From Oikopleura dioica (taxonomy: Eukaryota; Animalia; Chordata), in assembly GCA_907165135.1 (NCBI GenBank), contig OU015566.1:8122001-8186000 (forward strand): a stretch of 64,000 nt of DNA. Direction: 5' to 3'. A program made the position numbers and the translations under genes. A model generated the notes under the pieces. That model searched no databases. It was not told where the DNA came from and saw only the letters and a list, made by a program, of their open reading frames with translations. Shown one piece after another: positions 33,561-39,004 of the stretch. Each line of letters opens with the position of its first letter. The stretch's first letter is position 1.

Positions 33561-33776
33561 CCACACTCGTTTAAAAAAATGGGGATTCGTTCTATTCAAT
33601 TATTTATACGAAAAAGACAAAAAATAATCTGTTCTACTGAAGCAAAAACTTACGAAATACCGGTAGTCACAGAATTACCTACATTTATACCTTTTTCTGT
33701 GCAGAGTACAGACAATATCATTATTTATTCAAGCGTTCAAAAAACGGTATCTGATGAAAATTGTTCTTCAGATAAA

Positions 33777-36700
33777 ATGTCAGATACCGAGGATGAACCA
33801 AGTAGCCAAGAAATAATTGAAGAAGAAGTCGGGGAGGAAATGGAAGTTGTGGACGCGAAGGAGGCGGAAGGAGGCAATGACAAGGGCTCAGATTCCAGCG
33901 AAGATTCAGACGAGGACGAAGAGTACGAAGTCGAGAGTATTCTTCAATCGAGGTTCGTGAAGAAGAAAAAACAGTACCTGGTCAAATGGGTCAATTACTC
34001 CGACGAATGGAACACGTGGGAACCGATGGAGAACTTGGAAGGAAGTCAGGACTTAGTCGCAGCGTTTGAGAAGAAAGAAGCGGAGAAGCTGAAAAAAGAA
34101 GAGAGCGAAAAAGCTGCGGCGCTAGAGCGAAGAAAACAAGCGAAGGCGGAGCGCGAGGCGAAGCGAAGAGAGCGCGAAGCTGAAAAAGAAGCAAAGCGCG
34201 CAGAAAGGGCTAAGAAAGAAGCCGAGAAGCCAAAAAAGGAAATTAAAATCAAAACCGAAGGCAAGAAAAAATCACGTGCGATTATTTCCAGCTCTGAGTC
34301 TGAAGATCCCAGCGACGACGAAAAGAAATCTTTCGAAAAACCAAAACCAGTAGCAGTGAAAAATGAAAAGAAAAAGGAGTCTGACGCTGAGAGGCGAAAG
34401 AAGGAGCGAAAACAAGAAGCGAAAAGAAAAGCGCTCAAAGAAAAGAATGAGTTCCGACGAATGGAGCTTGAAGCTGAACGAAGGAAGAATATGACTAACG
34501 GAAGGGATATGATATTTTTATCGATATCATATGAAAAACAAGGGTGAAAAATATACGAAAATATACTAAAATATATAATAGAATCTTGTATTGCATGAAA
34601 AATCAGCCACCCACGAACTTTAATGTTCATGAATCTGATTGGCTTATATTTTAAACGCTGGTTTTTGATTGGATAAATTCAAATCAAATCCCGCAAAAGC
34701 TTACAAAAATCCTGGTCATGGGAAGGATGACGTAAGAGCACCTACTCCGGAAGTACCTCCGGAGATTCAAAGGTACGGGAAAAAATAGTAAACCAATAAA
34801 CTATTAGGAATGATATCAGTAGATTGAGTTCTACTGATACAATGTGTATGTGTGTTATTGTCAATTTTATTTTGAAATCCGGATATTTACATTTGTGGTT
34901 ATAGCGAGCGAACTGAACCTGAGCCTAAGTCGACGGAGGAGGTCACGCTGAGATTTCTTTTCGGATGCGACAAAGAATCTTATGGGTGGCAGGTGTGTTG
35001 GATGGTCATGAAAGTGTTTGTTTTGTCTAGGAAAGAGCAGGGCACCATTTTTCATTTCTCAGGCATTTTAGTGGAACAAGGCATGATTTAGTAAATTCGC
35101 GCAATAAATATTCGTAAACAGTTCAATTTTTGCAGTAAAATTGATAGAAGAGCAACTTCCATTTACTTAGATCTCTATCGAAGCGGAAATTGGTTTCCTG
35201 GGAGACACAACCTGTACGGATCGCGATTCGGGCGATTTTAAATACGTATTTTTAATCCATTGATTGATTAAATTTTATTGCAAAATCAAATGGATTTAAA
35301 TAAGCTCGAATAGTGGATTTATTGCATATTTTTCGACACTTTTTCTGAATAAATTACCCACTTAGTGCATTGAATTGGCAAGCATCATTTCATTACAGTC
35401 AGATTTCGTTTGACCTCGTTATTTAGCTTCCTCGAGTTGCAGACGAGTTCTCGCGTAGCAAGCTTGTCAAAGTTCAAAAGAAAGTCAAATGCAATGTGCT
35501 GAATTCAATGACTGTTTCAAATATTCCTCCGTCTGAAAAGGAATGGATTCATTTTTGTCGTGGATTCACTACTGCTTAATATGATATTATACACTATAAT
35601 ATTATATTAAATATATCGCAACAGTGACTCCCAAGCGCGTTAATTATGTATATCCAATGACAGTCAAAGTTTTCACATGGCGAAACACTTGTTGAACTAA
35701 CTGGAACTTCGACCAATCTTTCAAATACTGTTATAGCGGTGATGCGTGACTTGGTAAATCATCGCAAGAATTTACCTAAGTATCGACAGGTGCGGTAGTA
35801 TTACAGTAGTGTCGCGTTCATCAGTTTTTTAGGCGGAAAGTAAACATTTGGTTCTCAGTGTTATCATCCGCCATGAATTTTGGGAAAGTGTGTTCGGCAA
35901 AGGCAACGTCGAATTCCAAGGTCAGCGCTCGCTCTAACCACAAATCCGGGATTTTTTTTATCAAAACAAAACTTATTTTGATCTCTTAGGTTTTCAAAAG
36001 CAATGTTTTTCAAAACTCGCTTGTGGACTGGATCTTCCAGATTCCACGGAACGCTTGGTGCATATTCAGGGAGATGACGCTGGCTTGGCTGTCAGTGTTC
36101 GTCGGATTGCTAATAAGCTTATAAATGCATATGGCAATAACTTGGAAAACGCAAACGTAAGATTCAATTTATCGATCAAACTTTACTGTCTTTTCTAGGC
36201 TGACATTTACGAACCATACCAGCCTCGTTGCTATACCTCCAACGGCGTCCAGCGGGAGTATATTCTTTCAAAAATTGAAGCTGCTCCAGAAGAGAGTCGT
36301 CTTTCAATCCTAAGCACAATCACCAGTGGAAGTTGCGAGGTAGCTCTGGCACACCAGGAAGAAAATGACGACCATCTGGATGACTTGACGTTAGCCCCAC
36401 ATCCTGGCTTTAACTTTATACTAACGGGGAAACCAAGCTGCATCTCAATCATGAAATACTATCTTGTCGAAGACGGAATTATGACGAACCACAGCTTGAG
36501 CAAGCGACAGCTTGAAATCGTCAAGGAGGAAAAAGAGAGATTCGATCGACAGAAAGAGGCTGAAAATTTGAGCGTTGACGACGCGTGCTTTTACTCCCTT
36601 TCCAATCTCGCGTGCGATAAGACGGTGAATATTTATGGCCTCGTCGGAGACTTCGATTCTGCCGCTATTTCCGAGCATATGGCGCAATTTGGTGCGGTGG

Positions 36701-38707
36701 AAAAAGTATCTCGAACAGAAGAAGCAGATATTCCTATCATTGTCAAATTTGCCGAGTGGTCTGGCGCATTGGCAGCTTTGAAGAAACGAGACCAAGTCAT
36801 AAATGGCATGAAAATACTCGTTATTCCCTTTCGCTTCGGCGACGATAAGTGTTCAAGAGTCAGCAGAGCGGTCATTCTTGAAAACTTGCCTCAAATGGAC
36901 GAGAGTAGTTTGTACACTAAGTTTCGAGAAAATGGCGTTGCGTTGGCTCGCATCTGGCCGGAGAACCCGAAAATTGCTTTCGTCATCTTTTCAACGATGA
37001 AAATCGCCAAGAGCACTGAAAACATGAGTCCGATAACCATGCAGCCAATTTTTCATCAAGAAGAAGGGACAAAACGAGTTGACGCTTATTTGTTGACAAA
37101 TCGAATTTTCAAAGACCAGTTATTTACGCCTGAACAGAGGGTCTCTATTTTCGAAGATTTCGAGCTCATAAGGATAGAGTCTACGAGCGAAGAGAGGGTC
37201 AAGTCTATTCCTTGGAAGGAACCGATCAAACTTCACAGTGCAAAGCGGCCACAAGATTCTAGTTCTCTCCCGAAAAGGGCAAAAAAGCCTCGCCCTCCAT
37301 CAGAATCGAGTAGCCACCTTTCCTCCACCGTTTCCGACGATTATTTCGGCCCTGACAAGAGAGCAACTGTAAAAGCTCCAAAAATTCCCCCTCCATCAAA
37401 CGACGCTGTCAATCTTCTCGGCGGCATTACTGAAAATATGTCCATAGAAAAAGACCGAAAAGTAATTCAACAGCGGGAAAAAAGGATTGCAACTTACAAA
37501 TCTAGCCGTGAATGGTTCTATTTCGTCGAAAATGCTGACAATAAGACACAAGCGAGTATGCTGCCGCCGGAGACGACCAAGAAATACGAGCTCAATAAGA
37601 TCTTCCATCAACGCGCATTTGAATGGAAGGTTAAAATCGACGAATGGGTCGATAATGACAAGAAGAAAAAGATGCGTACGAGGACTCCCGAGCCTGATTT
37701 CAATGACTTTGAGGAACCGATGGAAGGACCTTGGGATCCTGCTAGTGAGGCGCTGAATGATTCGATTGAATCGATAGACCCGCCGAGTTCTGGAATCTTG
37801 AATACTGACGATCCCCAAGAGCCTCATCAAGAAATGAACCAGTTCGAAATGGTCGACACAATTGAAGACGATCCCTTCGATGCATCTCCGATGAATCCAC
37901 CCGCGGCTCCAATGTCAACCTCTTCTGGATATCAATCTGGATCAGCGGGTAGCTCTGGAGGATGGAATCTCGGTTCAACCAATTCCAGATCGAGGAGCGT
38001 CTCGAAAAAGCCTTCTCCTTCGCCACATGTCGGGCAATTCATTCCCAATCGCCGACAGAGAGGTAAAGCCAAACAGCAAGAGAAGAAAAACGACATGAAT
38101 CTTACTCCCTCACAACTGAGCAAAATAAATATCGGCAGCAATTTGGCGGCTACACTCAAAGCTCTTGGCCAAAATCGTAATATTTTGGAAAATCTTAGAA
38201 ATCAGCCGATAGAGGAAGAGGCTCCAGAAACCGATCCGATTGCCAGTCTCTCTGCCAATCCGCCTCAAGAAATTCGAAAAATTCTTAGAAATCTGAAGCT
38301 GGGAAAGTCTGATTTGGATCTGCTGCTGAATATACCACTGAAAGTGATGACTGAGCATAATGTGTACGCACTGATTGATAGCAAGCATGGAGATAGAGAT
38401 CACGTTAACGATAAAGACCCTGGAAAACTGATATCGCTGATAAAGATGTATTTGACGCCGCCTGATGAATCCGAAGATTACAAATCAGAGAGACACTCGT
38501 AAGTCTTTTGTCGTGTTTAACTATCTTCAAAATCTTTTTAGCCCAGAAGAGAGGCCCAAAATAAGAGATGAAGATGAAATTTACAAGTGCGTCGAATTCC
38601 GCGAAATTCTCCAGAGCAGTTTAAAGCTTCTCGCTCGAGGAAAAGCAATCATGACGGAGATTTACGACATAAACTCCATCGAGCTTGAAGCTGGAGCGGA
38701 CTTTTAA
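33777..38707 (+). CDS. Chromodomain protein with three degenerate KH domains and two RRMs (single-gene model inferred)
   Basis: Chromodomain EYEVESILQSR...YLVKWVNYSDEWNTWEPMENL (33922-34070). KH-like VFGKGN...LPDSTERLVHIQG and LTGKPSCISIMKYYL. RRM-like VNIYGL...FGAVEKV...IVKF and VILENLP...AFVIF. Confidence 0.65.
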
Positions 38708-39004
38708 TATTCTGTACCTAATTTTTTCCTCTTTACCTTATTGGACCCTTTTCAATTTCTATCTTATTCCAGTAATTCACTTATTTCCCGCTTCTTTGAC
38801 TGATAAATCGAGTTATGAATAATTACACCACTAGCGAGCTGATCATTTCAGAGTTAGTTTGTATGCTCAATGCGCTAGCCCACTGCAGACGGTTGTTTCC
38901 TATTCACGTTCACAAACTGTCCAGAAGAATATCTTCTACCTATATGAAAAATAGGTGACGATCAAAATAAACTCACGATTTATAAAAAAAAATACTTTTT
39001 CAGA

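What the first reader, a model, noticed from the sequence alone, without database searches (positions are those of the whole stretch)
33777..38707. Unusual chromatin-RNA reader: chromodomain + three PCBP-derived KH domains + two RRMs
Seen: an HP1/MPP8-like chromodomain with aromatic-cage residues (Y, W, Y). Hand-splicing of small exons missed by the ORF track gives three segments that track PCBP KH1-3 in order: GETLVELTGTSTNL (cf. PERIITLTGPTNAI), VFGKGN...LPDSTERLVHIQG...EPYQP (cf. LIGKGG...LPNSTERAITIAG...IPYQP) and LTGKPSCISIMKYYL (cf. ITGSAASISLAQYLI). The GxxG loops are degenerate. Two RRM-like domains follow (~36620-37040). A GA-AG intron at 34501-34699 links the chromodomain exon in frame; splicing through 34940-35660 is only partly resolved. 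I know of no animal protein with this architecture; fission-yeast Chp1 (chromo + RRM) is a functional analogy. Inference: a lineage-specific factor coupling methyl-lysine reading to nascent RNA, possibly in silencing.
Basis: partly seen in the sequence, partly recalled or inferred. Interest (0 to 1): 0.85.

Follow-up and report, generated by a model that had tools for sequence, protein, structure and literature searches.

The report
Chromodomain–KH–RRM–SLBP fusion protein of larvaceans
The planktonic tunicate Oikopleura and its relatives carry a real, conserved gene that joins a histone-mark reader to three kinds of RNA-binding folds, including a second copy of the module that normally grips histone mRNA hairpins; I found this combination described nowhere, and it is a good candidate for a bridge between marked chromatin and RNA.

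Summary
Real single gene of Oikopleura dioica (Okinawa assembly): 9 exons, 33777-38707, 1281 aa, single copy, spliced-leader trans-spliced, between acyl-CoA oxidase and IleRS. A database orthologue (CBY22010.1, 1261 aa, labelled only 'chromo domain-containing') maps exon for exon. RNA reads from a sister lineage show the GA-AG joint; in two distant relatives chromodomain and KH1 (or KH1-2) lie in one open frame. The chromodomain is HP1-type with intact cage and acidic clasp. KH1-KH2 fold is supported (Z 12-14 to IGF2BP3, Nova-1, PCBP2); KH3 is reduced and untested; PCBP origin is plausible, not shown. RRM1 supported, RRM2 weaker. RNA-contact residues are degenerate in KH, RRM1 and partly the SLBP-like domain. 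Best reading: methyl-lysine (probably H3K9me) reader that tethers an RNP; function untested. Found only in plankton contigs (at least 5 further lineages); no paper or earlier scan note describes it.

The parts
33770..33776 (+). Spliced-leader acceptor AG (33770-33771) and 5-nt 5' UTR
   Evidence: 189 reads of the sister lineage carry a loose 5' end before 33777; its 17-mer is absent from the window, occurs 54 times in the genome, is followed by a GT donor and lies beside 5S rRNA genes
33777..34500 (+). Exon 1: acidic N-terminus, chromodomain, Lys/Glu-rich linker
   Evidence: 79% identical to orthologue residues 1-240; read depth up to about 160
33924..34076 (+). HP1-type chromodomain, cage Y/W/Y, acidic clasp E/E
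   Evidence: PF00385 E 1.5e-17; CBX5 best PDB hit; 72-96% identical among relatives
34501..34699 (+). GA-AG intron 1 (199 nt)
   Evidence: joint 34499>34699 in 11 + 7 reads; phase 1
34700..34772 (+). Exon 2 (linker); also donor of an alternative joint to 35990
34905..34992 (+). Exon 3: start of KH1 (first strand at 34939)
   Evidence: joints 34770>34903 and 34992>35430
35427..35540 (+).
   Evidence: tblastn of orthologue; reads; phases
35664..35789 (+). Exon 5: end of KH1
   Evidence: KH fold
35833..35920 (+). Exon 6: KH2 first half, loop GxxN instead of GxxG
35990..36156 (+). Exon 7: KH2 second half, most conserved KH surface
   Evidence: same-lineage contig 36007-36157
36199..38498 (+). Exon 8: KH3, RRM1, RRM2, SLBP-like domain, low-complexity region, C-terminal helical domain
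36253..36471 (+). KH3-like domain, reduced (one helix and the GxxG region missing)
   Evidence: secondary structure strand-helix-strand-strand-helix; only non-significant KH hits, E 0.2-1
36619..36831 (+). RRM1, surface aromatics of RNP1/RNP2 lost
   Evidence: Z 11-12 to many RRMs
36865..37095 (+). RRM2, keeps one RNP1 aromatic (F/Y) in all relatives
   Evidence: TDP-43 tandem match E 0.003
37447..37656 (+). SLBP-type RNA-binding domain (three helices), divergent
   Evidence: family profile hits SLBP in PDB E 1.3e-4; one member hits PF15247 over positions 2-69 of 70, E 2.8e-5; Foldseek ranks 1-6 all SLBP; Z 9.2, rmsd 2.3 over 67
38233..38463 (+). Conserved C-terminal helical domain (40-49% identity in distant relatives), no clear known fold; faint Rpb4/RPC9/HRDC resemblance
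   Evidence: Z 5.1 and 3.4 only; no sequence support
38542..38707 (+). Exon 9: last conserved helix and stop
   Evidence: same-lineage contig splices 38498 to this exon (loose end)

Best explanation
A larvacean-specific nuclear adaptor. Shown: one SL-trans-spliced mRNA encodes chromodomain, three KH-fold domains, two RRMs, an SLBP-type domain and a helical C-terminal domain, conserved in this order in several species. Inferred: the chromodomain docks on a methylated lysine in an ARKS-type motif, most likely H3K9me2/3 (intact cage, acidic clasp as in HP1). Inferred: the KH trio and RRM1 have lost canonical RNA contacts and serve as a protein-binding or dimerising platform; RRM2 and the SLBP-like domain keep partial RNA-binding surfaces and hold a structured RNA (a hairpin, probably not the canonical histone stem-loop). 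The protein would thus tether an RNA or RNP to methyl-marked chromatin, working like Chp1 or MPP8-HUSH at transcribed heterochromatin such as transposons, without being a member of either family.
For: One gene; splice-free fusion in P0034 (chromo+KH1+KH2 in one ORF) and L004:3733-4851; transcript-derived P0059 starts with the translated leader and runs from chromodomain to KH2. Chromodomain 72-96% identical where the rest is 25-45%; clasp rule from PMC3013012. KH, RRM, SLBP folds. Acidic substitution of the GxxG loop abolishes RNA binding (PMC3413153); KH domains without RNA binding act as protein-binding sites in KHNYN (PMC11997328). O. dioica has transcribed, H3K9me3 plus H3K4me3/H3K36me3 marked transposons (PMC5240408).
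Against: No binding, localisation or knock-down data. All RNA modules are degenerate, so RNA binding may be gone altogether. The genome already has several ordinary HP1 genes, two SLBP genes and PCBP/hnRNP K genes. Chromodomains of this type also read non-histone methyl-lysines (own knowledge). Operon neighbours are metabolic or housekeeping genes and say nothing on function.
Confidence: 0.45

Rival explanations
1. Chromatin reader whose RNA-fold domains are all recycled as protein-interaction modules; it binds no RNA itself and scaffolds a chromatin complex.
For: GxxG lost in every KH and often acidic; RRM1 aromatics lost; SLBP TPNK motif and Arg180/Arg181 positions vary among relatives (roles from PMC10388802); the best-conserved KH surface is the strand-helix face away from the loop.
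Against: Three unrelated RNA-binding folds kept together in one chain across species; RRM2 keeps an RNP1 aromatic; the SLBP-like domain keeps the basic first helix, Lys146 and the tryptophan core.
Confidence: 0.22
2. A histone-gene factor: the SLBP-like domain binds histone pre-mRNA stem-loops and the chromodomain anchors processing at histone genes, complementing the two ordinary SLBPs.
For: Full-length SLBP homology; at least 54 histone stem-loop matches in the genome; no U7 snRNA above cut-off (inconclusive); the window and Bergen proteins keep K/R at the Arg181 position.
Against: Arg181 position is A or Q in three relatives; TPNK is PPET, PPDP or EPDC in most; Tyr144 and His195 positions changed (their roles from own knowledge); two intact SLBP genes exist; active histone genes are not an expected H3K9me site.
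Confidence: 0.12
3. An RNA-processing adaptor (splicing, SL trans-splicing or 3' end formation) whose chromodomain reads a methyl-lysine on a non-histone partner or on transcribed chromatin.
For: Most of the ordered chain is made of hnRNP-like folds (KH, TDP-43-like RRM pair); faint Rpb4/RPC9-like C-terminal fold; the lineage uses trans-splicing and non-canonical splice sites.
Against: HP1-type clasp and strong conservation of the histone-binding groove; C-terminal fold match is at background level.
Confidence: 0.14
4. The working product is mainly a short chromodomain-only protein; the long form is minor.
For: Alternative joint 34772>35990 in 8 reads against 21 for the in-frame joint in the same runs shifts the frame and stops after 28 codons; exon 1 has far higher depth than later exons; exon 1 frame reads on to a stop at 34547.
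Against: Depth is biased by the 80% likeness filter on reads from another lineage; all downstream domains are conserved in order in at least five distant lineages; the skipped form may be a decay substrate.
Confidence: 0.06
5. Two separate genes: a chromodomain ORF ending at 34547 and an RNA-binding gene.
For: The exon 1 frame has its own stop at 34547.
Against: Spliced reads across 34500-34700; one 1261-aa orthologue model; intron-free fusion in two relatives.
Confidence: 0.01

Closest known systems
HP1 family (CBX1/3/5, Rhino, LHP1)
   Same: Chromodomain with full aromatic cage, acidic residues before it and acidic clasp; best PDB hits.
   Different: No chromo shadow domain; 1281 aa with RNA-fold domains; ordinary HP1 genes exist elsewhere in the genome.
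SLBP (histone stem-loop binding protein, PF15247)
   Same: About 70-residue three-helix domain, same fold and core pattern.
   Different: Below Pfam cut-off (24.5 of 27 bits at best); TPNK and Arg181 not conserved; embedded in a chromatin reader; two ordinary SLBP genes are present. A 2026 survey of SLBP across eukaryotes (10.64898/2026.10.14.759114) mentions neither tunicates nor chromodomain fusions in its main text.
PCBP / hnRNP K / Nova three-KH proteins, and IGF2BP (RRM+KH)
   Same: Type I KH1-KH2 tandem (Z 12-14); LPxSTER and PYxP motifs as in PCBP (comparison with the genome's own PCBP exons, and memory); IGF2BP also combines two RRMs with KH domains.
   Different: No GxxG; no Pfam KH hit; very short KH2-KH3 linker; KH3 reduced; RRMs follow the KH domains and resemble TDP-43; chromodomain and SLBP-like domain added.
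S. pombe Chp1 (RITS) and MPP8 (HUSH)
   Same: H3K9me-type chromodomain at the N-terminus of a large scaffold linked to RNA-dependent silencing (own knowledge).
   Different: No SPOC/PIN (Chp1) or ankyrin repeats (MPP8) detected; chromodomain is closer to HP1; functional analogy only.
UniProt E4WXB8 / E4YII0 (CBY22010.1, CBY35291.1)
   Same: The orthologue itself, 1261 aa, catalogued as 'Chromo domain-containing protein'.
   Different: No KH, RRM or SLBP annotation in its name, and no study found.

Membership tests
Chromodomain (PF00385) | Score above the curated cut-off, whole model | tested here: met
   63.7 bits vs 25.1, positions 1-53
Chromodomain (PF00385) | Three-residue aromatic cage | tested here: met
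   Y, W, Y align with CBX5 Y20, W41, F44; invariant in 5 lineages
HP1 family | Polar clasp (Glu19/Asp58 of CBX5) | tested here: met
   E before the cage Y and E or D after NL
HP1 family | C-terminal chromo shadow domain | tested here: not met
   no PF01393 in the protein or at this locus
HP1 family | Binding to H3K9me2/3 | not testable with these tools
   needs peptide binding
MPP8 | Ankyrin repeats after the chromodomain | tested here: not met
   no Pfam ankyrin hit; models show KH, RRM, SLBP folds
Type I KH domain | Fold, KH1 and KH2 | tested here: met
   Z 14.4, rmsd 2.7 over 153 residues to IGF2BP3 KH12; Nova-1 13.0; PCBP2 12.2
Type I KH domain | Fold, KH3 | tested here: inconclusive
   one helix missing; no row covers it alone; sequence hits to KH proteins E 0.2-1; no profile match to KH2
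Type I KH domain | GxxG loop | tested here: not met
   KH2 loop is GxxN (GKGN, GDEN, GEEN, GVGN); KH1 and KH3 have none
PCBP subfamily | Closer to PCBP than to other KH families | tested here: inconclusive
   no hit; hnRNP K-like E 0.03, PCBP E 0.3-0.5 in a small set
RRM | Fold | tested here: met
   RRM1 Z 11-12; RRM2 by secondary structure and tandem match to TDP-43, weaker
RRM | RNP1/RNP2 surface aromatics | tested here: not met
   absent in RRM1; one RNP1 aromatic kept in RRM2
SLBP RNA-binding domain (PF15247) | Homology and three-helix fold over the whole domain | tested here: met
SLBP RNA-binding domain (PF15247) | Pfam gathering score | tested here: not met
   best member 24.5 bits vs 27; window copy no hit alone
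SLBP RNA-binding domain (PF15247) | TPNK motif and Arg181 | tested here: not met
   TP kept in 2 lineages only; position 181 is K, R, R, A, A, Q
SLBP RNA-binding domain (PF15247) | Binding of the histone 3' stem-loop | not testable with these tools
   needs EMSA
Rpb4/RPC9 (HRDC-like) | Fold or sequence match of the C-terminal domain | tested here: inconclusive
   Z 5.1 (7a6h_D), 3.4 (1y14_A), background level; no Pfam or profile support

The most novel reading that the evidence does not exclude
A larvacean invention in which an SLBP-derived hairpin-binding domain was recruited into an HP1-type chromatin reader, so that one polypeptide recognises a structured RNA and a methyl-histone mark and couples them: either a new RNA-guided route to silence transcribed transposons, or a chromatin-anchored histone mRNA or trans-splicing factor.
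Probability: 0.3. Interest if true: 0.88.

Novelty: new variant of a known kind. Interest (0 to 1): 0.72.

Why it matters
The SLBP domain is normally thought of as a dedicated histone-mRNA module; here a divergent copy sits in a chromatin reader together with KH and RRM folds, and the whole string has been kept across several larvacean lineages. O. dioica lacks DNMT1/3, has little heterochromatin, a reduced PRC1, and transposons with mixed silent and active marks (PMC5240408); how it recognises such loci is open. This single-copy gene gives a direct, testable candidate in an animal with laboratory culture, and shows how RNA-binding folds are recycled in a fast-evolving chordate.

Tried and rejected
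Pfam gave no KH hit and only sub-threshold RRM hits. PDB sequence search with the single KH-RRM region or with the KH1-2 profile found nothing. ESM Atlas: KH-like leads at 0.82 only, nothing for the C-terminus. A search meant to collect PCBP sequences returned 5 fragments and was not used, so no PCBP tree was built. First alignments with short fragments were misaligned and replaced. JGI metagenome scan added no new locus. Rpb4/RPC9 reading of the C-terminal domain: not supported beyond background. A match of the C-terminal profile to IGF2BP3 (E 0.016) is rejected because the model is all-helical. U7 snRNA search inconclusive. The conserved stretch 38830-38960 is not a known RNA and folds no better than shuffles (z -1.5); it is a coding exon of the next gene. 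Two papers (SL discovery, SLBP crystal structure) were not held. As the operators asked, the spliced window model was never joined or searched: exons were searched by reference, phases were checked exon by exon, and the database orthologue P0004 stood in for the full-length protein in folds.
Full report
Source. The genome has 64,281,565 bases in 19 contigs, the size given for Oikopleura dioica Okinawa OKI2018_I69 in PMC11067885. The gene lies on the + strand 216 nt after an acyl-CoA oxidase gene and about 150-300 nt before an isoleucyl-tRNA synthetase gene, an operon-like layout.

One gene. A search with the largest exon led to a cluster holding CBY22010.1 and CBY35291.1, O. dioica proteins of 1261 aa named 'Chromo domain-containing protein'. 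tblastn maps this protein onto the window from 33777 to 38704 in order. Nine exons result: 33777-34500, 34700-34772, 34905-34992, 35427-35540, 35664-35789, 35833-35920, 35990-36156, 36199-38498, 38542-38707; phases fit, there is no internal stop, and introns 1 and 4 are GA-AG. Poly(A) reads of a sister lineage (mostly under 90% alike) show the joints 34499>34699 (18 reads), 34770>34903 (22) and 34992>35430 (16); a same-lineage metatranscriptome contig shows the last intron. 189 reads carry a foreign 5' end just before the ATG; that sequence is the end of a 40-nt leader encoded 54 times in the genome, followed by a GT donor and next to 5S rRNA genes, i.e. the spliced leader. The start codon is thus 33777.

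Relatives. An exhaustive search of 1.84 billion representatives with the KH-RRM part gave only 17 proteins, all O. dioica-like or 28-42% identical pieces from marine plankton contigs. Five distant loci (L003, L004, L007, L020, L022) carry the parts in the same order; three include the chromodomain, the other two contigs start after it. In L022 chromodomain, KH1 and KH2 lie in one open frame of 462 aa; in L004 chromodomain and KH1 lie in one frame, and a transcript-derived protein of that species begins with the translated leader and runs to KH2 (P0059). L020 keeps acyl-CoA oxidase directly upstream. These contigs are unnamed; the shared leader and synteny point to other larvaceans, which is inference. 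The gene is single copy in the window's genome.

Domains. The chromodomain passes Pfam (E 1.5e-17), is closest to HP1 proteins among solved structures, keeps the Y/W/Y cage and an acidic clasp, which in PMC3013012 marks the H3K9me-selective class, and is 72-96% identical across lineages. AlphaFold2 on the orthologue's residues 268-800 with 22 aligned rows (mean pLDDT 65.5) gave three KH-like units and two RRM-like units. KH1-KH2 match IGF2BP3 (Z 14.4), Nova-1 (13.0) and PCBP2 (12.2) tandems. KH3 lacks a helix and was not matched alone. No KH has GxxG; the KH2 loop is GxxN, acidic in several relatives, like the GDDG change that abolishes RNA binding (PMC3413153). PCBP ancestry rests on short motifs and was not resolved. 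The RRM pair best matches TDP-43 by sequence (E 0.003); RRM1 has lost its surface aromatics, RRM2 keeps one.

New element. A conserved block at 37447-37656 is homologous to the RNA-binding domain of SLBP. The family profile hits four SLBP chains in the PDB (E 1.3e-4 to 5.7e-4, next unrelated 0.2); one relative matches PF15247 over 68 of 70 positions (E 2.8e-5); the predicted domain (pLDDT about 90) retrieves only SLBP at the top of Foldseek and scores Z 8.7-9.2 against a background of 6.7. Z 9 alone would be modest for a helical domain; the agreement with independent sequence hits makes the call firm. The genome has two ordinary SLBP genes, so this is a third, divergent copy. The phosphorylated TPNK motif and Arg181, the only base-specific contact (PMC10388802), are not conserved across the family, so recognition of the histone stem-loop is doubtful. 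A last helical domain (38233-38463) is well conserved and has no clear match.

How it likely works. Shown: the architecture, its expression, its conservation. Inferred: the chromodomain binds methyl-lysine, probably H3K9me2/3; the KH trio and RRM1 act as a protein platform (precedent KHNYN, PMC11997328); RRM2 and the SLBP-like domain hold a structured RNA; the protein ties an RNP to marked chromatin (0.45). Rivals: a scaffold with no RNA binding (0.22), an RNA-processing adaptor (0.14), a histone-mRNA factor (0.12), a chromodomain-only main product (0.06; an alternative joint 34772>35990 in 8 reads shifts the frame), two genes (0.01).

Comparison. It works, on this reading, like Chp1 or MPP8-HUSH, but it is a member of neither, nor of HP1 (no shadow domain; HP1 genes exist elsewhere), PCBP or SLBP proper. 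Full-text searches found no paper on this protein or architecture; most subscription papers are not searched. The scan's own notes hold no matching finding.

Verdict. Observation confirmed and extended; interpretation partly supported. New domain architecture made of known parts, function untested. Interest 0.72.

Noticed in passing
window 38863-38954 (+): A small conserved upstream exon of the cytosolic-type IleRS gene encodes about 30 residues rich in Arg/Lys/Ser with no acidic residue, splices in frame (GT at 38955, AG at 39003) onto the IleRS ATG, and is kept in three O. dioica lineages (4 reads leave from 38954). It looks like a mitochondrial presequence, suggesting a dual-targeted IleRS.
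   Followed up: partly
window 34772 to 35990: Alternative splice that skips exons 3-6 (8 reads, sister lineage), frameshifting: a roughly 293-aa chromodomain-only product or a decay substrate.
   Followed up: partly
G000:C5:10943547 and G000:C2:7187770 (L045, L046): Two ordinary SLBP genes; both have TPSK for TPNK and F for Trp183, the latter shared with the SLBP-like domain of this gene.
   Followed up: partly
whole genome G000: No U7 snRNA above the Rfam cut-off (best 25.9 of 34 bits) despite at least 54 histone stem-loops; may be a search miss.
   Followed up: no
whole genome G000: 54 spliced-leader gene copies, many as divergent pairs flanking 5S rRNA genes; about 35 chromodomain matches and at least 6 chromo shadow loci.
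   Followed up: no
L004:4830-4915: The transcript-derived protein P0059 implies an intron in this relative that does not read as GT-AG or GA-AG at the simplest cut (CT..AG or GC..CA); unexplained.
   Followed up: no
L020:4276-14467: The acyl-CoA oxidase / chromodomain-gene pair is kept in a species about 40% identical in this protein, although operons are said to be poorly conserved even within O. dioica (PMC11067885).
   Followed up: partly
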